Shown here piece by piece: positions 4,424 through 63,459 of a stretch of 64,000 nt of DNA. Each line of letters starts with the position of its first letter. Position 1 is the first letter of the stretch. The position numbers and the translations under genes were made by a program. The stretch is from NCBI RefSeq assembly GCF_011386835.1, contig NC_088806.1:29078001-29142000 (forward strand). Reading direction: 5' to 3'. The DNA is from Chrysemys picta bellii (Eukaryota). The notes beneath the pieces were generated by a model. The model did not search any database, was not told where the DNA came from, and was given only the letters and a program-made list of their open reading frames with translations.

Positions 4424-7809
<3,386 letters not shown>

Positions 7810-9724: not shown

Positions 9725-12518
<2,794 letters not shown>

Positions 12519-17661: not shown

Positions 17662-18097
17662 TTAATCTTCTTTGCCCTTCCCTTTGGAAGCAACTAGGTA
17701 AGAGATCTCCTCATGCTCTACCAAACTATCTGGATAGCATATGGGAGTCACCTCAAACTTCAAAATATCATAACCAGCCTCCTTCACTGCTTCCTCCAGA
17801 ACCTCCTTCTCCAGAAAGAGGCAGGGAAACTTGTGTTGGCCAACTACAAAATGACTACACTTCATTCCGTTCACCATCAGCAAGTGACCCCCTGGCTTTA
17901 ACAGGGAGCTGACATTCTTCAGTGCAGCACGGTAGGTACTCAGGTCATTGCAAATTCCTACTAAACAATGGCACATGAGCAGGCAGTCAGCAGGGGGCAG
18001 AGAGGCAAAAGTCAGAGGGTTGAATTTGGTGACATCACATTCCAGAACCTGCTTGACCGTTCTTCGTAACTTCTCTTCCTTCTCAGCCCACTTGTTC
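17662..18097 (-). pseudogene. Orphan type A exon 3 (complete 436 nt); exons 1-2 absent
   Basis: Exon 3 with intact acceptor. The upstream intron 2 homology stops at ~18330 at a poly-T junction that restarts the ~5.06 kb duplicate. Confidence 0.85.
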
Positions 18098-18782
18098 CTG
18101 GAAAGATAAATATAACACTGAAGAGAAATGTGCTACTGTTGTGCCAAAGAGCCCGTCATATCCAGGACCAATGCACAGTCAATATATCTGCAATCGGCTC
18201 AGTGGATGAGAGTTACATAATCACATGAAATCTCTGTTGGGTGCAATTCACCTGCTTAAGGCCAGATTTTCAGAAGAGCTCTGCTCTCATTTATCCAGAG
18301 TTGGTCACACTTTATATGAAGCTCCCATTTTTTTTTTTTTTTTTTAAGACTGAGCTCCTCAGAGCAAGGATTGTGCCTTTCTAGGTGTCTGTGCAATGCC
18401 TAGTCCACTTGGCTGCTACTGTAATACCAGTACAGATACTAACACTGCAAATGCTGGGTACCTATTAACCTAGCTAACCATGCATTCCCCTTAGGAGATG
18501 GTTGGGTTTTTTTGCTTTGGCTTTTGCTCAGTGCCTTTCAGCCTGTATATTACTACAGCAGATCAGGCAAACCTGACCCGGTGATCCAGCAGGTGATGGA
18601 GCTGCAGGTCTTTTTGTCTTTGACTTTTCCAAGGAAAGCACATTCCCGGCCCCACAGCCAGCGTTGACACCTTCCCTCTGGCTCCCAACATTCTACTACT
18701 AACAGTCTCTCAGGGCAGAGCAACCCGGGTGGGTCACAGATGATGAGGCAGTTCCTCAGCGAGCCTCTCAGATCCACCTTGG

Positions 18783-18824
<42 letters not shown>

Positions 18825-21800: not shown

Positions 21801-22716
21801 TGCCAAATGCACAGTAATGGTATCTGTTACAGCTGTATTCTGCAGCGGTGGGAGGTGTACATTGGCTGTGATTTTCCCCTATTAGGAGGAGAAAAAGTGT
21901 AGTGGTATTTCACTCAACTTTCCTTTTACATTCAGCATTGAGACTCTGCTTTAGAGGGTTTTCAGGAGAGAATTTAGATCCTTTCACTTGTGTCCCCTTA
22001 AGAGAAGAGAGGACTGACTCAGGGTCTGTCTACACAGGGATAAAAGACCTGCAGCATGGCTGTGGCTGCTCTGGTTCCAGAGCTCGGGCTCCAGTCCAAG
22101 CCCAAATGTCTATGCAGCAATTTTTCAGCCCCGGAAACCAATCCCTACGAGACCTGGTCAACTGACCTGGGCCAGCCTCAGGATTTTTATCCCTGAGTAG
22201 ACATAGAGCTATAGTTTAAATCCAGATGTATTAACCTGTAAATCTCCTTCTGCAAAGTTAATAATAAGACCTGGAACCACAGATAATTGCATATGGGAAA
22301 CAGATCTTTATTAGGCAAGCACCGATTGGGTGGAGATTACAATTATTCACCAAGACAAATCATTCATTCAACACCATGGCCCAATGCAGCTGTCAGGCCC
22401 CAGCCAATCAGTTCAAACGGATCAATGTTGAAATCACAGCGAGGTTATAGCCAGTATTGAGGACGATGTGTAAAGTGTGAGCCATGTTCTCAATGTCGGG
22501 AGACGTTATGGCAGCTCTGAGTGGGAAAGGACCGGGATGAGGGCAGCTTTAGTGGCACAACAAGGGGTTCAAGCTAGTGCATCCTGAACAAACTGGTTCT
22601 CCAAGGTGCTTGGAGGTCATCAAAGATCCACAGCGCACATTGAGCTTCAGGCCTACCAGCATCTACAGCTAATCTATTCTGCCTCTCTACTTCCCTTGGG
22701 CTGATGTATTTTCTCT

Positions 22717-25700
22717 TTAATCTTCTTTGCCCTTCCCTTTGGAAGCAACTAGGTAAGAGATCTCCTCATGCTCTACCAAACTATCTGGATAGCATATGGG
22801 AGTCACCTCAAACTTCAAAATATCATAACCAGCCTCCTTCACTGCTTCCTCCAGAACCTCCTTCTCCAGAAAGAGGCAGGGAAACTTGTGTTGGCCAACT
22901 ACAAAATGACTACACTTCATTGTGGTCACCATCAGCAAGTGACCCCCTGGCTTTAACAGGGAGCTGACATTCTTCAGTGCAGCACGGTAGGTACTCAGGT
23001 CATTGCAAATTCCTACTAAACAATGGCACATGAGCAGGCAGTCAGCAGGGGGCAGAGAGGCAAAAGTCAGAGGGTTGAATTTGGTGACATCACATTCCAG
23101 AACCTGCTTGACCGTTCTTCGTAACTTCTCTTCCTTCTCAGCCCACTTGTTCCTGGAAAGATAAATATAACACTGAAGAGAAATGTGCTACTGTTGTGCC
23201 AAAGAGCCCGTCATATCCAGGACCAATGCACAGTCAATATATCTGCAATCGGCTCAGTGGATGAGAGTTACATAATCACATGAAATCTCTGTTGGGTGCA
23301 ATTCACCTGCTTAAGGCCAGATTTTCAGAAGAGCTCTGCTCTCATTTATCCAGAGTTGGTCACACTTTATATGAAGCTCCCATTTATAATGACACAGGGA
23401 TCTTACAGACACAAATACTATGCATCGTAAATGTTCGGTTATCAGCAAATCTGTAGAAAATGGTGTAAATCTTTATAAGCTATCTATTGCTCTGTTGGGC
23501 CCTGTAACACTTTTGAGCAATAGACTAACCCGTTATTAAAACATGTACTCACCATTTATTCACCCTTTATAGCCCACTCATATAAATGGAAGATTATATA
23601 AAGTGTGGCCAATAATCTAAGGAGCTCAGCACCCCGTGTGCTGAGCTGTTTGGAATATCTAGTGCTTACAGCCCATTTTGAAGGCTAAAATGGGAGTGAA
23701 GGGGTGTCTAATCCTGAAATGTTTGCCACTCTGCCGGGGGGGAAATTACCCTTGTAGGAGTAAACCTTCCTCTTGTAAGCATTGCAAGTTCAAGCTCTGA
23801 GTCTGCTGAATTCAGAGGAATCCCTTGCTAGCGGTAGCTGGAGGGGAGTCCTGGTTCCAGACTTCTCTTAAATTTTTCCTTTACTTCAATCCAATCCACT
23901 TCTTTCTTTTTATACGTATTGAACACCACCATAATACATAACAATTATTAGGAAAAAAGTACCCCAGAGAAGATCCACAAATTAAAAGGTATTTTTACAT
24001 TTTTTTTTAGTTGAATTGTAATAGAACTAGGTCTCCTCCCCATACCTGTCCCCTTCCAGTTCACACACGTATTTCACCACCGGAGTCCAGTTAAATGCTC
24101 CCGGCTCTTTCTTTAGCCATTTCTGCAGTTCCTGGCAGTTCCGATCCATATAGTTTGTGATGACGATCTCCTTAAAGGACTCACAGGCAGAGAGTAGTTC
24201 GAAAATGCTGGGCACAGCACCAATATGAATCAGGGTGTTGCCTTTAACGCCATCTGGTTTGGAATGCAAAATACCTGTGTATCAGCACATACAGCAGCAG
24301 AGGATGGGAGAGGAGGAGGTTTGGGGGGGCTAAGGGTACAAGCTGGACAATTTCCCCTCTGGGTTTATAAAGGGTTTTAAGAAGGCCAGTTCCAGGAGAG
24401 GTAAAATGCAGCGAAGGACCCCTGACTGGCTTCAAGACTGAGCTTGATAAGTTTATGGAGGGGACGGTATGATGACCTTGCCTTATAAACAGATTGAAAA
24501 GGATTAGATTTGTATCGCTAAACGTCAATAAACGTTGATTTCACCACACAAATGGAAACAGACTAAAAAGCATTTCCATTGATAATAACTGAAATATACA
24601 GATAGACAATGTAAGAGAAATCCTGACTTGGATTTAAGAATATTTAGCTGTAAAATATTTGACATGTGATATTGACAATTGGTGTTTTAAAGGTTATAAA
24701 ACTTTTACTTTTTAAATCTCAGTGTCTACTGTCATTAAATAATTGTTGTCTGACTCTCCCCCGAGTGTCATATAATTTCCCACAAGTGTGAAAATTTAAA
24801 TCAATAAAAATAAAGAAGCTTAAAAATAAACATTGATCTTATCCATTGAAAGTATAAAAAAATTAATATTGAATTCTGCCAATCCTGCCTGGAAGTCAGA
24901 TTTTTAAGCCTTCTCTCTTTTTTTGTTGTTCTCCCCTGGGCCCTCTCCAATTTGTCCATATCTCTCTTAAAGCTGGCACCGGGAGATCTCATCTCATCTC
25001 TCATTTGAATAAATAAATTCAATTAAAGCTAGTTTCTAGCGTGAAGAGTTGTGGAGAAAGCTTAAAAAAATAACAACCCGAAAAGCTCAAAATCCAGAAG
25101 GCACCGAAACAAAACCCAAGATGTGTTGTCTTTTAAAATCTGTTATTTAAGCTCACTTGGCTTGAAGTTAGCAATACCCACACAGCCCAGGTAGCTTTAA
25201 AAGTACATTCTACAGGCCCACAAACCTAGATACACCAACAGCTTGAGAGAGAGTCCCTCTTTCGGGGACCGCTGGGGAGCTCCTTGACTGGCCACTCCTG
25301 GCTCAGAGGCACGAGCCGGCTTCTGATCTACCACCAGCCATTGGTCATCTTAATGCTGGGACCAGGGCTTGCTGGGGAATGGCACCAAGCTCTACTGCAT
25401 GGGATGAGGAGCTGGTCAATCTTGTAGGGAGACTGTACTTAAGGCACAAACTAGTAAAGGAGGATTTGCTCTGTCCTGGTCTGTGCCATAACCGCTGTCA
25501 CCAGTGATGTCGCCAACCACTGCACCCTACAGGACCCTGTGCACAAGCTCTGATGCATGCTCTCCCCCCCCCCCATTCCTCTCCCCTCTTCCATGCTGCC
25601 ACGATCCAGGTGCACCTTCTCCGCTGTTGATTCTTCAGCCTGTAGTGGCCCCCATTTTATGCTTCATCTCAGACTCTCCTATTGACTTTGGGAGACCCAT

Positions 25701-26117: not shown

Positions 26118-27479
26118 TTTGTCTCTGAGTTTGCAGATGTTCAACTGCCCGGCTGTTCCCAATCTGGGTTAATATGGGGTTCCTCATCTCTTCCTGGCCA
26201 TGACTCCACCTTCTTTTGTCCAAATATCAGATTACAGGCTTTCTTCATAACTCCCTCACACGCCCCTGTGACCTGGGGTGCCCGGGGCTGCCCTCACTGA
26301 AAATGCCAAGGTCAGGCCAGGCTGCAGAAGGGAGAGCAGATAGTCCCCAAACTAGTGGTTAACACTGAAGTTAAACTCACCAACCAGTCAAAGACAGTAC
26401 TTCTGATCTCCCACGCTGGTTATCAAGAAGTTTAAAAAAAGAAATCCCCCCAGCCCCCTTACTGCATTCCAGTTCTCTGGCTCTCAATCAGCACCTAGGT
26501 CCAGTACAGTGAGAAGGTATTTAAAAACTCAGTTCACATATACCAAATGTTCTTCAGATCCCATAGGGTCAGCCACGTTACCAGGTCAATATTAGTTTAG
26601 ATCCTACCCAAAATACCATGCTGCCAGCCAATCCTTTAGTATCTAATACTAAAGGTTTATTATAAAGAGTTATTAAATGATAAAGCACTCAAACACATAT
26701 AGAGATTTCCAAGTACATATATCATGTTCTTGGGAGTATCGTGAGTTTGCTGGCTTGGAAGTCCCTCTGAAACACATCCACAGCTTGGATGGGTCTTTCA
26801 GTACTTTGTTTAGAGCTTCGTTTGTAGAAAAGTTACTCCAGTTACTACATGCCTTGCTGACTCATGAGGTGTATCCCTTGCCTTCTCTCAATGGGTCAAC
26901 TGTACAGCCGATGATCCTTGATGGACCATCAAACAGACTAGGCGGTGCTGATGTCAAACTGCCTGGGGGTGTCTTCCAGAAACACAGCGGAAGTTTGGAA
27001 ATACAGATATACCCTACATATCTCTAACTCACAATACAAAGGCAATACAAACATAAACAAGATTATCAGACTTGGCAAATCACCAACACCTTACACAGCA
27101 TATCTAGCATAATTCATTCCAATTTTATAGTATTGCTGTTAATATTATAAATGGTCACCCATATTCCATACAGCGTCGAACTCCAGTGTCTCCCCAACCA
27201 TTCATGAACCTTGAACCCTTTTCTCCCCTGGAAGGATTTTTCTCTTACTGACGCTGGCTTCCCCCAAGAGAAGTACAAAGTGGGATTCCATGGCCTTTCC
27301 TGTGGAATCTGGCTCATCTATGAGCCCTGGCTATCAGCAGAGAGGCAACTGCATCATCTCATGCCCCTCTCTAGATACTGGACAGGTGCTGTTCATCCCA
27401 ACATGGCTCTGCTTGTAGGTTCTGATGCCACCATAGCCCATGATGGTGGCACTGCTGCAAGATATCCAAATGTACCACA

Positions 27480-27651
27480 AGAGGTTCCCTGCCTCTTTCT
27501 GGAGAAGGAGGTTCTGGAGGAAGCAGTGAAGGAGGCTGGTTATGATATTTTGAAGTTTGAGGTGACTCCCATATGCTATCCAGCTAGTTTGGGAGAGCAT
27601 GAGGGGATCTCTTACCTAGTTGCTTCCAAAGGGAAGGGCAAAGAAGATTAA
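27480..27651 (+). pseudogene. 3' fragment of type A exon 3 at the inversion breakpoint
   Basis: Encodes ...[20 protein letters not shown]...KGKGKED* and is fused at 27476-27479 (caca microhomology) to inverted non-coding sequence. Confidence 0.85.
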
Positions 27652-31417: not shown

Positions 31418-34400
31418 TAAGCATAATCTGTTTTGTTGTCATCTTTGCAATTTAAACATGAGTGTCACAATATTTGGTGTTTTCTTAAAGCCCCAGCTGC
31501 TGAAGTCACCTGACGATGTGAGAATCGCAGCTTTCTTTTTTTGGAGGGGTGTGTGTGGTACAAGTGACTTTCTAGTCCTCATGGTTTTGGGGGAAAACCC
31601 TGAAAAACAAGACCTGACTGTACCCAACAGGCTCAGCAAGCAAAGAAAAAGGACCCAGCATATATTATTATTATTTTCAAGGCCCTTGATTTTTAAGCCG
31701 ATCATGATTTTTTGGGGCCTTGTGGTGTTTCCATGCTTGGGGTTGTCCATACTGCTTTCCCTTGTCATTAGGGTTTCCCAAGAGAGTCCTGCTACCCTTC
31801 CCAGCAAGTCTCTCTTACGCCATTCACCTAGTTAGTGTGTAAACTTTCACACCTGGTTCCCTTTCCCCAGCGCTCTCAGAAACAGAGCGTGCGGGGCGGG
31901 CAGTCCCTTTTATAGCAGGCGTGCTTCCAGCCTGGACTCAGGTGATCCTAATCTCACGCTCTTAGGCAGTCCTGTGCTCCCCCTGCTCAGGTTTTCACCA
32001 GCATCGGCTCACCCCACCCTTCACTGGAAAACCAGGACAGTTAGAGACATGCCAAGCTGCCTTCAAGGGCGAGCTCACCTTATGATGGGGCCACAGGGAG
32101 GAGATGGAACACAGAAGCCAATGTACACAGGGCAGCGCTAGAACAAATGGTGCCCCAGGAGAGGAGTGTCCTCAGCGCCTCCTTCCCCACCACACACACA
32201 CATTTGTTAAACTTTTGAATACCTTACAGCACCCTGAGCTCGGCACCCTCCCAATCCCAGCACCTGGGTCACCTTCCCCTAAATCTGGCTCTGAATGTAT
32301 GTACTCCTGTCGGATTGTCACTGCACCCCTGCCCCAGATCCCTGGCTTGTGAAGTGCCCTCAGAGCATCAGTCGAACCTGTTTATCCAAGAACGTAACAC
32401 GAGGCCAAGTCGGAGGTTAATCTAACTAACTGCAAATTACCCAAGAGAGTCAGGCAAGGGAACGTGGCTTAGTGGCACGTAGTCCTAGTCCACTTTCTCT
32501 GAGGTAAGATGAGGGGTTAAGTAACAAGTGCAAGAGCAATAAAAGTGTTTAGATACAAGCGATGTCAGAGCAGTGCTTCGATAAACAACATATTTCAGTT
32601 GACCTCTTCCCTCCTGTGCAGCTGGGACGCTGACCTGGTCGAGGCTGAAATGGAAGGGGTGCCTCTTCGGACACAAGGCCAAAGTCCCTGGGGGCTCAGT
32701 TGACTTTGGTGGAGTTATGCCACCAGCAGAGACTTTAGCCCAGTGCTCCTTCTACAGAGAGGCTCTTTTCCAGCCATTCGGCATCATGGCGCCTAACTTT
32801 TAGATGCCTAGAAAGTCACAGGAACAACACGGCGATCCACCAATGCAATGAATAGGGAGAGACAGGCGTCTTTGAATGGGAGCCACCAACGCCCGAATGC
32901 TAAGCACGGAGCTGCCCAAGCTAGCCCAGGGGAAATGCTGATGACAGGGCTTTGCATATTGGGGACTGCCCAGAATGTATGGAACTGTGCAACCAGCTCA
33001 CCACAATGTCCCCACCGCTCCCATGTACTGTTTGTTCCTGGTTTGACTGTGATACATTTGGGTATCTTGCAGCGGTGCCACCATCACGGGCTATGGTGGC
33101 ATCAGAACCTACAAGCAGAGCCATGCTGGGATGAACGGTACCTGTCCAGTAGCTAGAGAGGGGCAGGAGATGATGCAGTTCCCTCTCTGCTGATAGCCAG
33201 GGCTCAGAGAGGAGCCAGAGTCCACAGGAAAGGTCAGGGAATCCCACTTTGTACTTCTCTTGGGGGAAGCCAGTGTGAGTAAGAGAAAAATCAGCCTAGG
33301 GGAGAAAAGGGTTCAAGGTTCATGAATGGTTGGGAGACACTGGAGTTGGGGGCTGTGACATTCTATGTATTATGGTGGTCATTTATGATATTATTAACAC
33401 CAATATTATAAAATTGGAATGAGTCATGCTAGATATGCTGTGTAAGGTATCAGTGAACATGTTCTGATTTGCCAAGTCCGATAACCTTGTTTATATGTTT
33501 ATATCACTTTTGTATTGTGAGTTAGAGATATATAGGGTATATCTGTATTTCCAAACTTGTGCTGTGTTTCTGCATGACACCCCCAGACAGTTTGGCATCA
33601 GCACTGCCTAGCCTGTTTGATGGTCCATCAAGGATCATCGGCTGTACAATTGACCCATTGAGAGAAGGCAAGGGATACACCTTATGAGTCAGCAAGGCAT
33701 GTAGTAACTTTTCTACAAACGAAGATCTAAACAAAGTAATGAAAGACCCATTCAAGCTGTGGATGTGTTCCAGAGGGACTTCCAAGCCAGCAAACTCACC
33801 AATACGCCTAAGAACATGATATATGGACTTGGAAGTCTCTGTATATATTTGAGTGCTTTATCATTTAACAACTCTTTATAATAAGCCTTTAGTTTTAGAC
33901 ACTAAAGGATTGGCTGGCAGCATGGTATTTTGGGTAGGATCCAAACTAATATTGACCTGGTAACATGGCTGACCCTATGGGGTCAGAAGAACATTTGGTA
34001 TATGTGAGCAGAGTCTTTAAATAACTTCTCACTGTATTGGACCTCAGTGCTGATTGGGATCCAGAGAACTGGAATGCAATAAGGGGGTTGTGGGGATTTC
34101 TTTTTTTTCATTTCTTGATAACCAGCGTGGGAGATCAGAAGTACTGTCTGTGACTGGTTGGTGAGTTTAACTTCAGTGTTAAACACTAGTTTGGGGAGTA
34201 TCTGCTCTCCCTTCTGCAGCCTGGCCTGACCTTGGCATTTTCAGTGAGGGCAGCCCCGGGCACCCCGGGTCACAGGGGTGTGTGAGGGAATTATGAAGAA
34301 AGCCTGTAATCTGATATTTGGAGAAAAGAAGGTGGAGTCATGGCCAGGAAGAGCTGAGGATCCCCATATTAACCCAGAACGGGAACAGCCGGGCAATTGA

Positions 34401-34423: not shown

Positions 34424-37400
34424 ATGGACCAGAGCCGCACTAAGAAAGAAGCTTTTGAGACATGTTTTGATCCAAAAGATTATTTGAAAACTTATTATTC
34501 CTTTGACTCCACAAGCAGTGAAAAAAATGATATTTTGATGTTTCTTCTGAGAAACTTCTTTAAGACCTTCATTTTGGGTGAGTGGGGTGTGTTTTGTGCC
34601 ATTCTGTTTGCACAAAGGCTGTTTTATAGTGGGATGCATGTTGCTGGAAACATGATTGTGTAGATCTGGATTTCTTTTAGCAGAGAAGATTTTCCCTAAT
34701 TATCTTTCTACCCCTGCTTTATAGCGTGATGGGTCACAGCTGGACATCCTCATTACAAAAGCCTGCCACAATAGGTGGGTTGAGAGTAGTATTGTCCTCT
34801 AGTGTGTGCCATGACAACACCAGGCTGTGCTAATGACCTAGATGGGTCTCCCAAAGTCAATAGGAGAGTCTGAGATGAAGCATAAAATGGGGGCCACTAC
34901 AGGCTGAAAAATCAACAGTGGAGAAGGTGCACCTGGATCGTGGCAGCATGGAAGAGGGGAGCGGAGGGGGGGGGGGAGAGCATGCATCAGTGCTTGTGCA
35001 CAGGGTCCTGTAGGGTGCAGTGGTTGGCGACATCACTGGTGACAGCGGTTATGGCACAGACCAGGACGGAGCAAATCCTCCTTTACTAGTTTGTGCCTTA
35101 AGTACAGTCTCCCTACAAGATTGATCAGCTCCTCATCCCAGGCAGTAGAGTTCTGTGCCATTCCCCAGCAAGCCCTGATCCCAGCATTGCGATGATGAAG
35201 GGCTGGTGGTAGATCAGAAGCCGGCATGTGCCATTGAGCCAGGAGTCGCCAGTCAAGGAGCTCCCCAGCTGTCCTTGAAAGAGGGACTTTCTCCCAAGCT
35301 GTTCATGTATCTAGGCTTGTGGGTCTGTGTCATAACTATAAAGGGAAGGGTAACAGCTGTCCTGTGTACAGTACTGTAAAATCCCTCCTGGCCAGAGAGT
35401 CCAAAATCTTTTTACCTGTAAAGGATTAAGAAGCTCAGGTAACCTGGCTGACACCTGACCCAAAGGACCAATAAGGGGACAAGATACTTTCAAATCTTGG
35501 GGTGGGGGAAGGTTTTTGTTTGTGCTCTTTGTTTGGGAGTTTGTTCGCTCTTGGGACTGAGAGGGACCAGACATCAATCCAGGTTCTCCACATCTTTCTA
35601 AACAAGTCTCTCCTATTTCAAACTTTTAATTAAACAGCCAGGCAAGGCGTGTTAGTTTTACTTTGTTTTCTCAACTTGTAAATGTACCTTTTACTAAAGT
35701 GTTTATCTCTGTTTGCTGTACTTTGAACCTGAGGCTAGAGGGAGGTCCTCTGAGCTCTTTAAGTTTGATTACCCTGTAAAGTTATTTTCCATAATGATTT
35801 TACAGAGATTATTTTTATCTTTTTTCTTTAATTAAAAGCCTTCTTTTTAAGAACCTGATTGATTTTTCCTTGTTTTTAGATCCAAGGGGGTTGGATCTTG
35901 ATCCACCAGGAGTTGGTGGGAGGAAGGAGGGGGGATGGTTAATTTCTCCTTGTTTTAAGATCCAAGGGGTTTGGATCTGTATTCACCAGGGAATTGGTGA
36001 AGAGTTTCTCAAGGCTTCCCAGGGAAGGGAATCCATTTGGGAATGGTGGCAGCGGACCAGATCTAAGCTGGTAGTTAAGCTTAGAAGTTTTCATGCAGGC
36101 CCCCACATTTGTACCCTAAAGTTCAGAGTGGGGAAACAGCCTTGACAGCCTGTAGAATGTACTTTTAAACCTACCTGGGCTTTGTGGGTATTGCTAACTC
36201 CAAGCCAAGTCAGCTTAAATAACAGATTTTAAAAAATAACATCTTGGGTTTTGTTTCAGTGCCTTCTGGATTTTGAGTTTTTCGGGCTGTTATTTTTTTA
36301 AGCTTTCTTCACAACTCTTCACGCTAGAAACTAGCTTTAATTTAATTTACTTATTCAAATGAAAGATGAGATCAGATCCCCTGGGGACAGCTTTAAAAAA
36401 CATATGGAGAAATCAGGCAGAGCCCAGAGGAGAGCAATAAAAAAAGAGAGAAGGCTTAAAAATCTGACTTACCGGCAGGATTGGCAGAGTTCAATATTTT
36501 TTATATATATAGTTTTAATGTATAAGGTTAATGTTTATTTTTAAGTTTCTTTATTTTTATTGATTTAAATTTTCACACTTGTGGGAAATTATATGACACT
36601 CGGGTGGGGGGAGTCAAACAACAATTATTTAATGACAGTAGACGCTGAGATTTAAAATGTTAAAGTTTTATAACCTTTGAAACACCAATTGTCAATATCA
36701 CATATCAAAATATTACAGCTAAATATCCTTAAATCCAAGTCAAATAAGTTCTGGAGCAGGATTTCTCTTACTTTGGCTAGCTGTATATTTCAGTTATTAT
36801 CAATGGAAATGCTTTTTAGTCAGTTTGTGTGTGTGTGTGTGTGTGGTGTGAAATCAACGTTTATTGACGTTTACCGATACAAATCTAATCCTTTTCAACC
36901 TGCTTATGAGGCAACCTCATCATACCGTCCCCTCCATAAACTTATCAAGCTCAGTCTTGAAGCCAGTCAGGGGTCCTTCGCTGCATTTTACCTCTCCTGG
37001 AACTGGCCTTCTTAAAACCCTTTATAAACCCAGAGGGGAAATTGTCCAGCTTGCACCCTCGGCCCCCCAAACCTCCTCCTCTCCCATCCTCTGCTGCTGT
37101 ATGTGCTGATACATGGTATTTTGCATTCCAAACCAGATGGTGTTAAAGGCAACACCTTGATTCGTATTGGCAATGCTCCCACCATTTTCGAACTGCTCTC
37201 TGCCTGTGAGTCCTTCAAGGAGATCATCGTCACAAACTATATGGATCGGAACTGCCAGGAACTGCAGAAATGGCTAAAGAAAGAGCCAGGAGAGTTTGAC
37301 TGGACTCCAGTGGTGAAATACGTGTGTGAGCTGGAAGGGGACAGGTACGGGAGGGAGACCTAGTTCTGTTACAGTTCAACTTAAAATATTTTAAAAGCCC

Positions 37401-38750
37401 TTTTAATTTTTTGGTCTTCCTTCCCTGGGGTGCTTTTTTCCTAATAATTATTATGTATGGTGTTATGGTGGTGTTAGGGTGACCAGACAGCAAATGTGAA
37501 AAATCGGGATAGGAGTAGGGGGTAATAAGAGCCTATATAAGAAAATTACCCAAAAATCGGGACTGTCCCTATAAAATCAGGACATCTGGTCACCCTAGGT
37601 GGTGTTAAATAAGTATAAAAAGAAAGAAGTGGATTGAAGTAAAGGAAAAATTTAAAATGTCTGGAACCAGGACTCCCCTCCAGCTACCCCTAGCAAGGGA
37701 TTCCTATGAATTCAGCAGGCTCAGAGCTTGAACTTGCAACGCTTATGAGAGCAAGGTTTACTCCTACAAGGGTAAATTCCCCCGCCGCAGAGTGGCAAAC
37801 ACTTCAGGATTAGACCCCCCTTCACTCCCATTTTAGCCTTCAAAATGGGCCGTAAGTGCCAGATGTTCCAAACAGCTGAGCACACGGGATGCTAAGCTCC
37901 TTAGATTATTGGCCACACTTTATATAATCTTCCATTTATATGAAGGGCTATAAAGGGTGAATAAATGGTGCACGATTTACACCATTTTCTACAGATTTGC
38001 TGATAACCAAACATTTACAATGCATAGTATTTGTGTCTGTAAGATGCCTGTGTCATTTACTAACCCTTATAAAACCATTAGAAATGGGAGCTTCATATAA
38101 AGTGTGACCAACTCTGGCTAAATGGGAGCTGAGCTCTTCTGAAAATCTGACCTTAAGCAGGTGAATTCCACCCAACAGAGATTTCATGTGACTATGTAAC
38201 TCATCCACTGAGCCGATTGCAGATATATTGACTGTGTGCACTGGTCCTGGATATGAAGGGCTCTTTGGCACAATAGTAGCACATTTATCTTCAGTGTTAT
38301 ATTTATCTTTCCAGGAAAAAGTGGGCTGAGAAGGAAGAGAAATTACGAAGAACGGTCAAGCAGGTTCTGGAATGTGATGTCACCAAATTCAACTCTGTGA
38401 CCTTTGCCTCTCTGCCCCCTGCTGACTGCCTGCTCTTGTGCTATTGTTTGGGAACAAATTGCAAAGACCTGAGTACCTACCGTGCTGCACTGAAGAACAT
38501 CAGCTCCCTGTTAAAGCCAGGGGGTCACTTGCTGATGGTGACCACAATGAAGTGTAGTCATTTTGTAGTTGGCCAACACAAGTTTCCCTGCCTCTTTCTG
38601 GAGAAGGAGGTTCTGGAGGAAGCAGTGAAGGAGGCTGGTTATGATATTTTGAAGTTTGAGATGTCTCCCACATGCTATCCAGCTAGTTTGGTAGAGCATG
38701 AGGGGATCTCTTACCTAGTTGCTTCCAAAGGGAAGGGCAAAGAAGATTAA
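34424..38750 (+). CDS. NNMT-like: Type A3 NNMT/INMT-family methyltransferase-like protein, 265 aa; join(34424..34577,37137..37344,38315..38750)
   Basis: Exons 154/208/436 nt, GT-AG, open frame. [13 protein letters not shown]; LIRIGNAPT; TNYMDRN. Intron 1 carries a solo LTR and intron 2 a hAT MITE. Confidence 0.93.
35328..36147 (+). mobile_element. Solo LTR (820 bp) in A3 intron 1
   Basis: Termini TGTCA...TGACA; 5-bp TSD gtctg/gcctg (1 mismatch); empty site cttgtgggcc(t/c)gtagaat in the other units. Confidence 0.88.
37475..37597. mobile_element. hAT-type MITE (123 bp) in A3 intron 2
   Basis: TIR tagggtgaccaga...tctggtcacccta; perfect 8-bp TSD ggtggtgt. Confidence 0.92.
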
Positions 38751-40662: not shown

Positions 40663-43455
40663 ATGGCTCAGTTCACCGGAGGAGACGATTACCAGGCAGA
40701 GTTTGATCCAAAGGCCTATCTCGGATATTTTAAATTTGGAGAAGACACCTTGGGAGAGAAATATCTTAACTTTGCCCTGAAACACTATTGTAAAACCTTC
40801 ACTTCAGGTATGGCCTGTTGGTGGGATCTGGGACTCATCCCTGGCTTGTCTATTCTTCTCTGCCGTGGCGCTGGAACATTTTTAATAGTGGGGGAGTTGA
40901 AAGGAGCCCCCTTCCCCAGTCCATGCCCCACCCAAGAGCTGGGGCTGGGAGCAGAGCCGTGTCTCCAGGAGGGGTGGACCCGAAAAGGGTAAGGGGAACG
41001 AGGCTGGGGCTGGCAGCTGGGAACCCAGGCGCGTGCCGGGAGCCTGCTGGGAGCCAGAAGCAGAGCCCCGGTGTGGGTCCGGCGGCTGCGACTCCATGTG
41101 CAGGGCCGGGAGCAGAGCCCAGCGTAAAATCTGAGGCTGCTGCAACACCTCCCACACCCCTGATTCCCGCGTCTATGCTTGTCGGTGACATTAGAAACCA
41201 GGTTATTGTCATGGCACCTTTTGGCCTGGGTTGTGGTGAAGTATCCTGTAATATGCATTAGTTATTTGGTTTCCATGGTCACGCCTATCTGATGTGCAAG
41301 AAACATGCTAGGGCAGTTCATCAACACTCACCTTGCGTCACAGGGGGGCTGAGGACCCGTCAGCTAGTGTGTCTAGATAAAAAGCCCATTAAATAGGCTA
41401 AATATTATTGTTCAGCCTTTGGAAGTACCACAGGTCCTCAGAAAGCTTTTCCCATCCTCCCCTTTCTGCAAGCATCCATGCACTACGGCCCTGGACTGAG
41501 ACTCAGGACACCTGAGTTCTGTTCTCAAGCCTGACACTGACCTTCCCATTGACCCCGGGCAAGTCACATCATTGCTCTGTGCCTCATTTGTAAAACAGGG
41601 ATAATGACATTAGTGTTCCGGTCCAAAGCGCTTGGAGCTGTACAAATGTAAAGCACTAGACAGAAAAGTTAGTTATTATTCATTATTATCTAGCAAATTT
41701 CCCCGTAGCCTTCTCCTGGGAGCGGAAATGAGGTCTTTTATGAAGAGCTCCAACTCTGTTCAAAAATCACCCCTGCAGTTAAATTTTTGAATATACTTGC
41801 TTGCATCCCTTACTACGAAGTAGATGTGATGCAAATTTAAATTCTGTTTACAAAGCTGTTGGATTGCAAGGGCCAGAGATATTGCATCATACTGTATTTT
41901 TCTAGTATTAACTATTGGTGTAACCATATAGATACATACATAATCGTGGGGATTGTCCTTCAGTTCAGTAACTTGTAAGGGGGAATTGCTTGGCTCATGG
42001 GGACTGGTAATAAACTTAGAGGATCTTACATTACAGAAAAACTAAAACTGAATCGAAATCTAAGTGCAATAAAAAGGGTATCTGATGCTAATTTGCATGT
42101 CAAGAAGCATTGAGGACTTGCAGCCAACGCTTTGTAACACTGAAGTCACCAGGCGTTTGGCCATTGTCTTCAATGGAAGCAAGATTAACGCTAGACGTAT
42201 TAAACTAAATCAACTAAGTTTAATTGAGACGAAGTTGCATTTTGTCTGATTAAGATGCAATGAGCTCCAGGAATTCTTTATTGTGAAACAGGTGTGGTGA
42301 AAGGCGACACCCTGATTGATATTGGCAGTGGCCCCACCATCCACCAGCTCCTCTCCGCCTGCGAGTCCTTTAAGGAGATCATTGCTTCAGACTATACAGA
42401 TTGGAACCTCCGGGAACTGGAGAAATGGCTGAAGAATGAGCCAGAAGCATTTGACTGGACTCCAGTGGTGAAATACGTGTGTGAGCTAGAGGGAAACAGG
42501 TACAGGGGCTGGAGAAAGCAGATTGTCTACAGTCCTTGTGTATTGCTTAGTTTGTCTGTGCATCATCATCTACTTATCCTCCTGGAAGCTGCAACATAAT
42601 CAGTGGTGAATACAGGCAGAAATTTTGGGGAGAAAATAAAGAGCAGGGGGAATGTGGTTTTCAGTCATGGTAGGAGTCTGTATAGGGTCCCCAGGAGGTC
42701 TCAGCATCAAAGATCTTGGAGAGAGCTATCAACTGATAATGGCATTTTCCCGTCTGAAATGCAGAGGCCAGGGTAAATTCATCTGGTTTCAGATTTTTTA
42801 AAAATCCAAAATTCAGACAGAGGGTCCACTGAAAAAGTAGCCAGAGCTCATGTCCCGTGGAAAGGGAACTAAAGATAAAGTTAACGCAGGGTCCTACAAA
42901 CACACCTCACTCTAGCGAATTATGTTTTCCTTCTAATACTCACACCTATATCATAGGAAGACACAAATTGCAGGTAACCCTTTGGAGTCCATCTTGTATT
43001 GTCCATGTGTATGTCTCTGCAGGGGAAAGGAGGCTGAGAAAGAGGCAAAATTAAGGAAAACCATCAAACAGGTTCTAAAATGTGATGTCCACAAAAGCAA
43101 CCCCATGGATCCAATTGTCCTGCCTCCAGCTGACGGCCTGGTCTCATCACTGTGCTTGGAAGCTGCTTGCAAAGATCTGACCACTTATCGCATTGCTCTG
43201 AAGAACATCAGCTCCCTGTTAAAGCCAGGAGGACACTTGGTGCTGAGTGGAGTTTTGGGCTGCAGTTTCTACATGGTTGGCCTCAAAAGGTTCTCGTGTT
43301 TGGTCCTGAGAGAGGAATTTCTGAGAGAAGCCCTCAGTGAAAATGGCTTCATCATTCAGGAGTTTGAGGTTCTCGTCAGGGATGATAATATCGATGTCAG
43401 CTCTGATTTCTCTGGGAAGTTCTTCATTCTTGCTTGCAAAGAGGAAGCAATATAA
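40663..43455 (+). CDS. NNMT-like: Type B2 NNMT/INMT-family N-methyltransferase, 261 aa; join(40663..40807,42292..42499,43023..43455)
   Basis: Exons 145/208/433 nt, [20 protein letters not shown]; near-identical to B1. Confidence 0.95.
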
Positions 43456-48171: not shown

Positions 48172-51613
<3,442 letters not shown>

Positions 51614-53536: not shown

Positions 53537-56334
<2,798 letters not shown>

Positions 56335-61370: not shown

Positions 61371-63459
61371 ATGGACCAGAGCCGCACTAAGAAAGAAGCT
61401 TTGGAGAAACTTTTTGATCCAAAAGAGTTTTTGAAAGCTTATTATTCCTTTGACTCCACAAGCAGTGAAAAAAATGATATTTTGATGTTTCTTCTGAGAA
61501 ACTTCTTTAAGACCTTCATTTTGGGTGAGTGGGGTGTGTTTTGTGCCATTCTGTTTGCACAAAGGCTGTTTCATAGTGGGATGAGTATTGCTGGAAACAT
61601 GATTGTGTAGATCTAGATTTCTTTTAGAAGAGGAGATTTTCCCTAATTATCTTCTACCCCTGCTTTATGGCGTGATGGGCCACAGCTGGTCATCCTCATT
61701 ACAAAAGCCTGGCACAATAGGTGGGTTGAGAGTAGTATTGTTCTCTAGTGTGTGCAATGACAACACTGGGCTGTGCTAATGACCTAGATGGGTCTCCCAA
61801 AGTCAATAGGAGAGTCTGAGATGAAGCATAAAATGGGGGCCACTACAGGCTGAAGAATCAACAGTGGAGAAGGTGCACCTGGATCGTGGCAGCATGGAAG
61901 AGGGGAGAGGAGGGCGGGGAAGAGCATGCATCAGTGCTTGTGCACAGGGTCCTGTAGGGTGCAGTGGTTGGGGACATCGCTGGTGACAGCGGGTATGGCA
62001 CAGACCAGGACAGAGCAAATCCTCCTTTACTAATTTGTGCCTTAAGTACAGTCTCCCTACAAGATTGACCAGCTCCTCATCCCATGCAGTAGAGCTCTGT
62101 GCCATTCCCCAGCAAGCCCTGGTCCTAGCAGTGGGATGACGTATGGCTGGTGGTAGATCAGAAGCCGGCTCGTGCCACTGAGCCAGGAGTCGCCAGTCAA
62201 GGAGTTCCCCAGCGGTCCCCGAAAGAGGGACTTTCTCCCAAACTGTTGGTGTGTCTAGGTTTGTGGGCCTGTAGAATGTACTTTTAAAGCTACCGGGGCT
62301 GTGTGGGTATTGCTAACTCCAAACCAACAGAGCTTAAATAACAGATGTTAAAAGATAACACATCTTGAGTTTTGTTTCGGTGCATTCTGGATCTTGAGCT
62401 TTTCGGGTTGTTATTTTTTTAAGCTTTCTCCACAATTCTTCACGCTAGAAACTAGCTTTAATTGACTTTATTTATTCAAAGGGAAGATGAGATGAGATCT
62501 CCCGGTGCCAGCTTTAAGAAAGATATGGACAAATCGGAGAGGGCCCAGGGGAGATGAACAAAAAAAGAGAGAAGGCTTAAAAATCTGACTTCCAGGCAGG
62601 ATTGGCAGAATTCAATATTAATTTTTTTTATACTTTCAATGGATAAGATCAATGTTTATTTTTAAGCTTCATTATTTTAATTGATTTAAATTTTCACACT
62701 TGTGGGAAATTATATGACACTCGGGTGGGGAGGGAGTCAGACAACAATTATTTAATGACAGTAGACACTAAGATTTAAAATGTTAAAGTTTTATAACCTT
62801 TAAAACACCAATTGTCAATATCACATGCCAAATATTTTACAGCTAAACATCCTTAAATCCAAGTCAAATAAGTTCTGGAGCAGGATTTCTCTTACTTTGT
62901 CTAGCTGTGTATTTCAGTTATTATCAATGGAAATGCTTTTTAGTCAGTTTGTGTGTGTGTGGTGAAATCAACGTTTATTGACATTTACTGATACAAATCT
63001 AATCCTTTTCAACCTGCTTATGAGGCAACCTCATCATACCGTCCCCTCCATAAACTTATCAAGCTCAGTCTTGAAGCCAGTCAGGGGTCCTTCGCTGCAT
63101 TTTACCTCTCCTGGAACTGGCCTTCTTAATACCCTTTATAAACCAGAGGGGAAATTGTCCAGCTTGTACCCTTAGCCCCCCCAAACCTCCTCCTCTCCCA
63201 TCCTCTGCTGCTGTATGTGCTGATACACAGGTATTTTGCATTCCAAACCAGATGGCGTTAAAGGCAACACCTTGATTCGAATTGGCGGTGTGCCCAGCAT
63301 TCTCGAACTCCTTTCTGCCTGTGAGTCCTTCAAGGAGATCATCGTCACACACAATACGGATCGGAACTGCCAGGAACTGCAGAAATGGCTAAAGAAAGAG
63401 CCGGGAGCGTTTAACTGGATTCCGGTGGTGAAATACGCGTGTGAGCTGGAAGGGGACAG
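61371..63459 (+). CDS. NNMT-like: Type A5 NNMT/INMT-family methyltransferase-like protein, exons 1-2 only; join(61371..61524,63252..63459); exon 3 expected beyond the window
   Basis: Exons 154/208 nt with GT-AG; intron 2 runs to the window end (917 nt in A1). LIRIGGVPS; THNTDRN. Confidence 0.9.

What the first reader, a model, noticed from the sequence alone, without database searches (positions are those of the whole stretch)
38430..38600. Hypervariable substrate-pocket segments among type A copies in an otherwise near-invariant exon 3
Seen: residues ~159-171 read [13 protein letters not shown] (A1), [13 protein letters not shown] (A2), [13 protein letters not shown] (A3), [12 protein letters not shown] (A4). 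Residues ~195-211 read [68 protein letters not shown]. Flanking stretches ([30 protein letters not shown]) are essentially identical. Established: these segments hold the NNMT acceptor-pocket residues (164, 167, 197-204). Inference: diversifying selection on ligand specificity, as in a receptor-like repertoire.
Basis: partly seen in the sequence, partly recalled or inferred. Interest (0 to 1): 0.72.

Follow-up and report, generated by a model that had tools for sequence, protein, structure and literature searches.

The report
Fast-evolving pocket in turtle NNMT-like genes
A painted-turtle cluster of duplicated nicotinamide-methyltransferase-like genes changes its amino acids mainly at the residues that line the enzyme's small-molecule pocket, faster than neutral drift at the substrate side, so the copies probably recognise different ligands.

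Summary
The window is Chrysemys picta chromosome DNA carrying a tandem cluster of NNMT-family genes of two types. The quoted peptide strings are real, but there are five full type A exon-3 copies, not four. The string MVNGM belongs to an exon-3-only duplicate at 18097-17662(-), not to the copy at 38430-38600.

Within the window, 19 of the 30 codons in the two segments vary in amino acid, against 11 of 114 elsewhere in exon 3 (p=4.5e-9).

I compared 19 type A genes from six testudinoid species:
- The most variable sites coincide with literature-defined NNMT/INMT pocket residues (p=1.6e-7). They also include exon 1-2 sites 20, 64, 65, 69 and 85-87.
- Codon models give omega of about 3 for pocket codons.
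- When local synonymous rate is left free, the 13 acceptor-pocket codons keep omega 4.3-4.9 (p about 0.001) and segment 159-171 keeps omega 2.5 (p=0.013).
- Segment 195-211 does not exceed neutrality (omega 1.3, p=0.45). It is mostly a two-state cassette at codons 202-205 that gene conversion moves between copies.
- Neighbouring type B genes show no such pattern.

Verdict: diversifying selection on the acceptor pocket is supported. The "receptor-like repertoire" reading is not shown. The scan had already noted this gene family on this same window (s1-328287), not on other DNA.

The parts
38315..38750 (+). Exon 3 of type A gene A3 (protein identical to RefSeq-derived P0156). It contains the finding's coordinates.
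   Evidence: Open frame, AG acceptor, stop at 38748-38750. Pfam PF01234, E=7.6e-41.
38427..38465 (+). A3 codons 159-171 ([13 protein letters not shown]): end of strand beta4, loop and short helix. Includes pocket residues 163-165 and 167-169.
   Evidence: Segment omega 2.47, p=0.013, with its own synonymous rate.
38535..38585 (+). A3 codons 195-211 ([17 protein letters not shown]): end of strand beta5 and hairpin. Includes pocket residues 197, 198, 201 and 204.
   Evidence: Omega 1.33, not significant. Cassette at codons 202-205.
7374..7809 (+). Exon 3 of A1 (protein identical to P0048). Segments at 7486-7524 ([13 protein letters not shown]) and 7594-7644 ([17 protein letters not shown]).
22717..23152 (-). 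Exon 3 of A2 (protein identical to P0045). Segments at 23040-23002 and 22932-22882.
17662..18097 (-). A2a, an exon-3-only copy inside a near-identical duplicate of the A2 3' region. It carries MVNGM at codons 195-199 (17877-17863). No exon 2 lies upstream.
51181..51613 (+). Exon 3 of A4 (protein identical to P0047). Segments at 51293-51328 (one codon, 165, deleted in frame) and 51398-51448.
37137..37344 (+). Exon 2 of A3 (RefSeq-type acceptor). Holds variable motif I codons 63-65 (G-N-A) and codons 85-87 (N-Y-M), which replace D-Y-S of NNMT.
6249..6456 (+). Exon 2 of A1 (motif I G-G-M; codons 85-87 Q-N-T).
24046..24253 (-). Exon 2 of A2 (motif I G-A-V; codons 85-87 N-Y-M).
50053..50260 (+). 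Exon 2 of A4 (motif I G-G-V; codons 85-87 Q-N-T).
63252..63459 (+). Exon 2 of A5 (motif I G-G-V; codons 85-87 H-N-T). Its exon 3 lies beyond the window (L008 20869-21304).
34424..34577 (+). Exon 1 of A3 (codon 20 = Y). The other exon 1 copies are at 4424-4577 (A1), 26117-25964 (A2, -), 48172-48325 (A4) and 61371-61524 (A5), all with F20.
12084..12503 (+). Exon 3 region of type B gene B1, used as control. The other type B exon 3 regions are at 43021-43440 and 55900-56319. Canonical DIGSG and DYT motifs, and a conserved pocket.
27476..27651 (+). Orphan fragment of the 3' part of a type A exon 3 (matches exon-3 nt 263-436).

Best explanation
The segment belongs to a subfamily ('type A') of the NNMT/INMT small-molecule methyltransferase family, found so far only in Testudinoidea. 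These genes sit in tandem A+B cassettes of about 13 kb.

All type A genes examined keep an intact 265-codon frame and a confidently predicted NNMT fold. They have replaced the canonical cofactor and catalytic residues:
- D61 is R, H or Y.
- G65 is M, V, A or Q in most copies, and remains G in some.
- D85 is Q, N or H.
- Y20 is mostly F.
- D197 is T or N.
- S213 is C.

Their amino-acid changes are concentrated on the residues that line the ancestral cleft. At the acceptor side (20, 164, 167, 168, 198, 204, 242 and neighbours, i.e. the 162-169 loop-helix of the finding's first segment), non-synonymous change exceeds the neutral rate. This indicates positive, diversifying selection that gives each paralog a differently shaped pocket.

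Gene conversion between the tandem copies homogenises the scaffold and shuffles ready-made pocket pieces. The clearest case is the NYYM/SHFV cassette at codons 202-205 in the second segment. As a result the repertoire is a mosaic.

Once a pocket version is set it can be held: one three-species orthogroup has no pocket change at all.

Shown here: pocket localisation, omega above 1 at acceptor sites, conversion, intact frames, a spliced transcript, and the contrast with type B. Inferred: the selected property is ligand (substrate or bound small-molecule) specificity. Whether the proteins still methylate anything is unknown.
For: Identity and fold.
- Pfam PF01234.
- 54% identity and TM 0.92-0.95 to human NNMT structures for an AlphaFold model with pLDDT 88.8.
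- Window proteins are identical to Chrysemys picta RefSeq-derived entries.

Pocket localisation.
- The pocket lists were taken beforehand from papers: acceptor residues from PMC12402838 and PMC7918612, cofactor residues from PMC11987180.
- Entropy is 0.90 at these residues against 0.25 elsewhere, p=1.6e-7. The top variable sites are 168, 65, 167, 64, 20, 169 and 69.
- 10-11 of the 30-33 sites with posterior above 0.8 for omega>1 are listed pocket residues (p=2e-5 to 5e-5), and 23 lie within two residues of one.

Selection.
- M0 omega is 1.02.
- M1a/M2a LRT is 99 with one tree and 66.7 with four segment trees. Pocket omega is 3.1-3.2.
- With a set-specific synonymous rate: acceptor13 omega 4.3-4.9, p about 0.001; pocket24 omega 2.3-2.5, p about 0.006; segment 159-171 omega 2.47, p=0.013.
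- Tree-free minimum-mutation count against pooled synonymous changes: omega 2.4, p=1.3e-5.

Control.
- Type B genes in the same cassettes have 0.33 non-synonymous changes per pocket codon against 0.30 elsewhere. Type A has 2.00 against 0.54. Exon 3 outside the segments is equal in both types, at 0.37.

Functionality.
- No stop codon in 19 genes, although about 13 nonsense changes are expected under neutrality.
- A GT..AG exon 2-exon 3 joint appears in contigs of one public run.
- The orthogroup A3/Trachemys/Emys shows 0 of 24 pocket changes against 12-16 of 241 elsewhere, while paralog pairs show 7-12 of 24.

Conversion.
- PHI test p=0.001.
- Non-coding divergence between copies ranges from 0.5% to 15.6% in 250-column windows.
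- The cassette is identical at the nucleotide level in A1, two Emys genes and a Mauremys gene.
Against: - Recombination is present, and it is known to inflate site-model tests. I used my own implementation of the codon models, with branch lengths fixed up to a scale factor, not PAML or HyPhy, and I ran no formal GARD.
- The most conservative tree-free test, using only the pocket's own synonymous changes, is not significant (44 non-synonymous against 8 synonymous, omega 1.67, p=0.11).
- Synonymous diversity is also raised 1.6- to 1.9-fold in the segments, so part of the excess reflects older ancestry.
- Segment 195-211 alone and the cofactor-side residues are not above neutrality.
- Background omega is high (about 0.8).
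- No ligand, activity or tissue is known.
- The RNA evidence is one spliced contig pair from a run whose RNA status is only a guess.
Confidence: 0.6

Rival explanations
1. Relaxed constraint. Type A proteins are dead enzymes kept for a role that needs only the fold. Their former active-site residues drift neutrally (omega about 1), while the scaffold stays constrained.
For: - Canonical SAM anchors and catalytic residues are lost.
- Cofactor-side pocket omega is 1.8 and not significant. Segment 195-211 omega is 1.33 and not significant.
- Tree-free tests against the pocket's own synonymous changes are not significant.
- Whole-gene omega is about 1.
- There is an in-frame codon deletion at position 165 in A4.
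Against: - Acceptor-pocket omega is 4.3-4.9 (p about 0.001) and pocket24 omega is 2.3-2.5 (p about 0.006), even with a free local synonymous rate.
- A three-species orthogroup has 0 of 24 pocket changes where about 2-2.5 are expected at an equal or neutral rate and about 8 at the family-wide rate.
- The near-identical duplicates A2 and A2a differ by three non-synonymous bases in pocket codons 197-198 and by only two other bases in about 1.7 kb.
Confidence: 0.22
2. Conversion mosaic only. The two segments are old islands that escape the gene conversion homogenising the rest of the gene, or they are imported cassettes. Their diversity would then reflect age and shuffling, not an excess of amino-acid-changing substitutions.
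For: - PHI test p=0.001.
- The NYYM/SHFV cassette is shared identically across paralogs and species.
- The synonymous-rate multiplier is 1.6-1.9 in the segments.
- Pairs involving A1 have dS of 0.16-0.24 inside the segments against 0.04-0.07 outside.
- Non-coding divergence is mosaic.
Against: - Age raises synonymous and non-synonymous change alike, so it cannot give omega above 1 once the local synonymous rate is free.
- Type B genes in the same cassettes, with the same conversion environment, have no variable pocket.
- Escape from homogenisation limited to pocket codons itself implies selection for keeping the differences.
Confidence: 0.13
3. Decaying pseudogene copies, or an assembly artefact such as haplotype duplicates, give spurious 'paralog' differences.
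For: - A2a is an exon-3-only copy in a near-identical duplicate.
- An older-assembly protein (P0161) joins an MVNGM-type exon 3 to full exons 1-2.
- A Mauremys copy has a 1-nt deletion in exon 1.
Against: - Fifteen complete and four partial genes from six species have no stop codon, although about 13 are expected under neutrality.
- Canonical splice sites are present.
- RefSeq-derived proteins are identical to the window models.
- The paralogs differ by 4-9% in coding sequence and up to 15% in introns, far above allelic divergence.
Confidence: 0.03

Closest known systems
Nicotinamide N-methyltransferase (NNMT) and indolethylamine N-methyltransferase (INMT), Pfam PF01234
   Same: - Same three-coding-exon layout.
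- 54% identity with gap-free residue correspondence.
- Predicted fold at TM 0.92-0.95 to human NNMT.
- Conserved G63, D142, V143, Y24 and Y25 (mostly), and the PPADC and KPGG motifs.
   Different: - Motif I G-S-G is degenerate at positions 64 and 65.
- D85 (the ribose anchor) is Q, N or H, and D61 is R, H or Y.
- Acceptor and catalytic residues Y20, D197, S201 and S213 are mostly replaced.
- Pocket residues vary between paralogs instead of being conserved.
NNMT-like gene diversity in amphibians (Schulte et al. 2024, Biol J Linn Soc 142:188, as cited in PMC12617036)
   Same: A lineage-specific multiplication of NNMT-like genes in an ectotherm clade, with an unexplained role.
   Different: That work reports high expression in male breeding glands of frogs. 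I read only the citing paper, not the original. Here the clade is Testudinoidea, the tissue is unknown, and the feature is pocket-focused omega above 1 together with loss of the SAM anchors. The turtle counterpart gland (the mental gland) is absent in Chrysemys and Trachemys (PMC8129087).
Tandem small-molecule enzyme or binding-protein families with positively selected ligand-contact sites (for example cytochrome P450 substrate-recognition sites, and lipocalin-type carrier families). This comparison comes from general knowledge and was not tested here.
   Same: Tandem arrays, gene conversion of the scaffold, and amino-acid diversity focused on ligand-contacting positions.
   Different: Different fold. 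Here the cofactor site of a methyltransferase is itself among the variable positions.
Engineered human NNMT variants (PMC12402838)
   Same: Laboratory evolution for new acceptor specificities changed D167, A198, S201C, Y242F and N249. The library targeted 20, 24, 164, 167, 197, 198, 201, 204, 213, 242, 247 and 249. Most of these positions vary naturally in type A, and C201 is the common type A residue.
   Different: The engineered enzymes keep the SAM site and are catalytically active. The activity of type A proteins is unknown.

Membership tests
NNMT/PNMT/TEMT family (Pfam PF01234) | Significant match to the family profile | tested here: met
   Exon 3 alone gives E=7.6e-41 and 140 bits against a cut-off of 25. 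Exons 1 and 2 align to family proteins.
NNMT/PNMT/TEMT family (Pfam PF01234) | Class I Rossmann-type methyltransferase fold superposable on NNMT | tested here: met
   AlphaFold model of the A3 protein: pLDDT 88.8, pTM 0.89. Foldseek TM 0.92-0.95 and rmsd 1.4-1.7 A to human and mouse NNMT and to INMT 2A14.
Active SAM-dependent NNMT/INMT enzymes | Motif I glycine loop G63-x-G65 | tested here: not met
   G63 is invariant, but position 65 is M, V, A, V and V in A1-A5 (G or Q in some Mauremys and Gopherus copies), and position 64 is G, A, N or S. Type B keeps G-S-G.
Active SAM-dependent NNMT/INMT enzymes | Acidic residue at the end of strand beta2 (D85) that binds the SAM ribose | tested here: not met
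   Position 85 is Q, N, N, Q and H in A1-A5. None of the 17 sequences covering exon 2 has D or E there. Type B keeps D-Y-T.
Active SAM-dependent NNMT/INMT enzymes | Adenine-side contacts D142 and V143 | tested here: met
   Invariant in all 19 type A sequences.
Nicotinamide-specific NNMT | Acceptor and catalytic residues Y20, D197, S201, Y204 and S213 | tested here: not met
   Y20 occurs only in A3 and its relatives, and is F, C, G or L elsewhere. Position 197 is T or N. Position 201 is C, except S in A1. Position 204 is F, Y, C or V. Position 213 is C.
Active SAM-dependent NNMT/INMT enzymes | SAM binding and methyl transfer measured in vitro | not testable with these tools
   Needs recombinant protein.
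Gene families under diversifying selection at ligand-contact sites | A site class with omega above 1 that maps to the binding site and survives control for recombination | tested here: met
   - M2a with four segment trees: LRT 66.7.
- Acceptor13: omega 4.3-4.9, p about 0.001, with its own synonymous rate.
- Posterior sites are enriched in pocket residues, p=2e-5.
- Limits: the models are my own implementation, and the strictest tree-free test is not significant.

The most novel reading that the evidence does not exclude
Type A proteins are no longer ordinary SAM methyltransferases. They would be a germline-encoded set of small-molecule binding proteins, or enzymes using an altered cofactor, built on the NNMT fold. 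In each, the merged cofactor-plus-acceptor cleft has been reshaped by selection and by cassette exchange between tandem copies. This would give testudinoid turtles a repertoire for sequestering, carrying or modifying different heterocyclic compounds, whether dietary, environmental or signalling.
Probability: 0.2. Interest if true: 0.8.

Novelty: new variant of a known kind. Interest (0 to 1): 0.55.

Why it matters
Small-molecule methyltransferases of the NNMT/INMT family are normally single, conserved genes. This is a vertebrate clade in which one branch of the family was amplified, lost its textbook cofactor anchors, stayed intact for tens of millions of years, and changes fastest exactly where the ligand sits.

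If the paralogs bind or modify different compounds, they would be a natural experiment in re-tuning the NNMT pocket, at the same positions that protein engineers mutate. They would also be a possible case of an enzyme fold turned into a binding-protein repertoire.

I found no paper describing this in the library searched.

Tried and rejected
- Mental-gland idea. Type A is restricted to Testudinoidea, and mental glands arose in that ancestor (PMC8129087). By analogy with frog breeding-gland NNMT-like genes, I considered a gland secretory role. I rejected it as a lead because the same paper states that the glands are absent in Chrysemys and Trachemys, which both keep intact type A genes (six copies fully or partly recovered in Chrysemys).\n- Approximately-unbiased topology tests of segment trees against the whole-CDS tree failed because of a tree-file formatting error. 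I replaced them with a PHI test.\n- The look-up of A5 by its 265-residue product was not on record. I recovered it through the longer isoform P0153.\n- Loss of the upstream exon-2 acceptor in A3 first looked like a gene-killing change. Exon 3 was searched by reference, and full-length searches used database proteins that proved identical to the window's models. Exons were joined only inside local scripts, for the codon alignments.\n- M7/M8, formal GARD, and coordinate-based distance mapping were not run.
Full report
**What is there.**
The window has no N and looks vertebrate in composition. Positions 38430-38600 lie in a 144-codon open exon (38315-38750, +) that matches Pfam PF01234 (NNMT/PNMT/TEMT) at E=7.6e-41. 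It aligns without gaps to mouse and human NNMT, with exon residue i equal to NNMT residue i+121.

A tblastn search of the window with this exon finds five full copies of the same type ('A') at 7374-7809(+), 18097-17662(-), 23152-22717(-), 38315-38750(+) and 51181-51613(+). It also finds a 3' fragment at 27476-27651 and three copies of a second type ('B', about 56% identical).

Using database relatives as guides, I located exons 1 and 2:
- Four type A genes (A1-A4) are complete in the window, with GT/AG introns and open frames.
- A fifth gene (A5) has exons 1-2 at 61371-63459, and its exon 3 lies beyond the window.
- The copy at 18097-17662 (A2a) has no exon 2 upstream. It sits in a near-identical duplicate of the 3' part of A2.
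- The genes alternate as A+B units of about 13 kb.

The spliced products of A1, A2 and A4 are 100% identical to Chrysemys picta bellii RefSeq-derived proteins. A3 matches P0156 in every region inspected. The overlapping locus L008 places the window on CM062333.1 at about 29.08-29.14 Mb. RefSeq-type models are 265 residues long, and their numbering equals human NNMT numbering throughout.

Exon 3 was searched by reference, and full-length work used the identical database proteins.

**Check of the observation.**
The four rows, however, mix five copies. [17 protein letters not shown] is A2a, while A3, the copy at the stated coordinates, reads [17 protein letters not shown] like A2.

Within the window's five exon-3 copies, 19 of the 30 codons in 159-171 plus 195-211 vary in amino acid, against 11 of 114 elsewhere (Fisher p=4.5e-9). 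Codons that vary only synonymously are not enriched (2 of 30 against 6 of 114).

Two caveats apply:
- The flanks are conserved but not invariant, since 234-251 also vary.
- Within the window, the second segment is mostly A1 against the rest, plus positions 197, 198 and 209.

**Wider data.**
Word-index protein searches and cluster look-ups show type A proteins at 79% identity or more only in three families:
- Emydidae: Chrysemys, Emys, Trachemys, Malaclemys.
- Geoemydidae: Mauremys mutica and M. reevesii.
- Testudinidae: Gopherus, Chelonoidis.

The next hits drop to about 62%. I fetched the genomic DNA of Emys orbicularis, Trachemys, Malaclemys, Mauremys mutica, Gopherus flavomarginatus and the Chrysemys continuation. 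From these I extracted 15 complete and 4 partial type A coding sequences, all of the same length apart from one in-frame codon deletion in A4.

None has a stop codon. With a tree length of 1.54 neutral substitutions per codon, about 13 nonsense changes would be expected under neutrality (P=1.6e-6).

Contigs of one public run join 37344 to 38315 across a GT..AG intron and cover exon 3 and the 3' flank but not intron 2. At least one type A paralog is therefore spliced and transcribed. Its pocket letters are A5-like, and the run's RNA status is only a guess.

**Do the variable sites map to the pocket?**
Before looking at rates, I took pocket residues from papers:
- Acceptor site: 20, 24, 164, 167, 168, 197, 198, 201, 204, 213, 242, 247 and 249 (PMC12402838, PMC7918612).
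- Cofactor cavity: 20, 25, 63, 69, 85, 86, 87, 142, 143, 163, 165, 169 and 204 (human INMT 2A14, PMC11987180).

An AlphaFold model of the A3 protein (pLDDT 88.8) superposes on human NNMT at TM 0.92-0.95 and 54% identity, so the residue mapping is safe. Segment 159-171 is the end of strand beta4, a loop and a short helix. Segment 195-211 is the end of beta5 and a hairpin.

Amino-acid entropy across the 19 sequences averages 0.90 at the 24 pocket positions and 0.25 elsewhere (Mann-Whitney p=1.6e-7). The most variable sites of the whole protein are 168, 65, 167, 64, 20, 169 and 69.

It also takes in the N-terminal lid (20), the motif I loop (64, 65), position 69, and 85-87 in exons 1-2. G63, D142 and V143 stay invariant. 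The canonical D85 is Q, N or H in every copy, D61 is R, H or Y, D197 is T or N, and S213 is C.

**Selection or drift?**
I wrote a Goldman-Yang-type codon likelihood (F3x4; branch lengths optimised under M0, then scaled).
- M0 gives omega 1.02.
- A fixed partition gives omega 3.09 for the 24 pocket codons against 0.83 for the rest. The LRT against omega=1 is 45.
- M1a against M2a gives LRT 99, with 16% of sites at omega 5.

Gene conversion is present, and it can inflate such tests:
- The PHI test gives p=0.001.
- Non-coding divergence between copies swings from 0.5% to 15.6% along the gene.
- A four-codon cassette at 202-205 (AAT TAC TAT ATG against AGT CAT TTT GTA) is identical in A1, two Emys genes and a Mauremys gene that are otherwise unrelated.

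I therefore applied four controls.
1. Separate trees for four segments. M2a LRT is 66.7 and pocket omega is 3.16.
2. A separate synonymous rate for the tested codons, so that older ancestry cannot pass as selection:

| Codon set | omega | p |
|---|---|---|
| 13 acceptor codons | 4.3-4.9 | about 0.001 |
| 24 pocket codons | 2.3-2.5 | about 0.006 |
| 13 cofactor codons | 1.8 | not significant |
| Segment 159-171 alone | 2.47 | 0.013 |
| Segment 195-211 alone | 1.33 | 0.45 |

3. A tree-free lower bound, joining the distinct codon states of each column by a minimum spanning tree.
   - The pocket has 44 non-synonymous and 8 synonymous changes.
   - This gives omega 1.67 and p=0.11 against its own synonymous changes.
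   - It gives omega 2.4 and p=1.3e-5 against the pooled synonymous rate.
4. A within-locus control using type B genes from the same cassettes and species.
   - Type B has 0.33 non-synonymous changes per pocket codon against 0.30 elsewhere.
   - Type A has 2.00 against 0.54.

Synonymous diversity is itself 1.6 to 1.9 times higher in the segments, so part of the excess is older ancestry or resistance to homogenisation.

**Orthologs against paralogs.**
Chrysemys A3, Trachemys P0155 and Emys P0157 form a supported group. They differ at 12-16 of 241 non-pocket codons but at 0 of 24 pocket codons. Paralog pairs within a species differ at 7-12 of 24. At the family-wide pocket rate about 8 changes would be expected in that trio.

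Pocket change is therefore episodic: it is tied to the divergence of paralogs and is then held. Other pairs, such as A5 and Emys P0046, keep changing. A2 and its exon-3 duplicate A2a differ in about 1.7 kb by five bases. Three of these are non-synonymous changes in pocket codons 197-198.

**Reading.**
The best-supported account is diversifying selection on the acceptor side of the cleft, centred on the 162-169 loop-helix of the finding's first segment and on positions 20, 198, 204 and 242. It acts on tandem paralogs whose scaffolds are homogenised, and whose pocket pieces are shuffled, by gene conversion.

The second segment contributes diversity mainly through the two-state cassette and positions 197/198. 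It is not by itself above neutrality. The cofactor-side changes are compatible with simple loss of constraint after the SAM anchors were lost.

That the selected trait is ligand specificity is an inference from where the sites lie. Nothing here shows what is bound, whether methyl transfer persists, or where the proteins act. The 'receptor-like repertoire' wording therefore goes beyond the evidence.

**Comparison and novelty.**
The genes belong to the NNMT/INMT family by profile and fold, but they fail the sequence hallmarks of an active SAM-dependent enzyme (motif I second glycine, D85, Y20, D197, S213).

I found no paper on turtle NNMT-like genes. The nearest published parallel is the high diversity and breeding-gland expression of NNMT-like genes in frogs (Schulte et al. 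2024, as cited in PMC12617036). A turtle mental-gland link is unlikely, because Chrysemys and Trachemys lack those glands (PMC8129087).

Laboratory evolution of human NNMT targeted the same positions, and one improved variant carries S201C, the common type A residue.

The scan had already noted the degenerate SAM site and a fast-evolving pocket of this family on this same window (s1-328287). The present work adds the site mapping, the codon tests with their limits, the type B control, the cassette, and the ortholog contrast.

**Limits.**
- The codon models are my own implementation, with scaled branch lengths.
- No formal GARD was run.
- Only 19 sequences were used.
- Several related tests were run. 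After a four-fold correction, the acceptor set and the 24-codon pocket remain below 0.05.

Noticed in passing
window 17662-23400 (A2a against A2): The exon-3-only copy A2a lies in a near-identical duplicate of the A2 3' region. Below A2 position 23388 the aligned copies differ at five bases. Three of them (22925, 22923, 22922) are non-synonymous changes in pocket codons 197-198 (TT to NG). An older-assembly protein (P0161) joins an MVNGM exon 3 to full exons 1-2, so locus against haplotype status is open.
   Followed up: partly
window 37114-37137: In A3 the upstream in-frame exon-2 acceptor used by some gene models (AG in A1, A2, A4 and A5) is TG. The acceptor 21 nt downstream, used by the 265-residue RefSeq-type models, is intact, so the gene is not broken.
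   Followed up: yes
window 53540-53683 with 63252-63459; L008: A RefSeq-derived isoform (P0153, 270 aa) joins a type B-like first exon ([13 protein letters not shown]) to A5 exons 2-3, which suggests read-through or chimeric A/B transcripts. Mauremys reevesii P0167 shows the same pattern.
   Followed up: no
window 27247-27291 (-) and 33239-33280 (+): Two short open stretches (MESHFVLLLGEASVS) match the alternative first exon of an Emys type A model (P0001). They lie near the orphan exon-3 fragment at 27476-27651.
   Followed up: no
window 35302-36136 and 37473-37639: Stretches inside A3 introns 1 and 2 have very high contig depth in all four public runs laid (thousands against tens on exon 3). 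They are probably interspersed repeats.
   Followed up: no
L011 22847-22999 (Mauremys mutica): One Mauremys type A copy has a 1-nt deletion in exon 1, while its exons 2-3 are open. It may be a decaying member or a gene that uses another first exon.
   Followed up: no
L001 20963, L007 22655, L009 22030: A third NNMT-like type (motif [17 protein letters not shown]) lies downstream of the A/B cassettes in Emys, Malaclemys and Mauremys. It looks like the more canonical NNMT gene of the locus.
   Followed up: no
window 38432-38458, run X7 contig: The spliced contig carries an A5-like first segment but with H instead of Y at codon 164. This is either a further paralog or an allele that differs at a pocket residue.
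   Followed up: no
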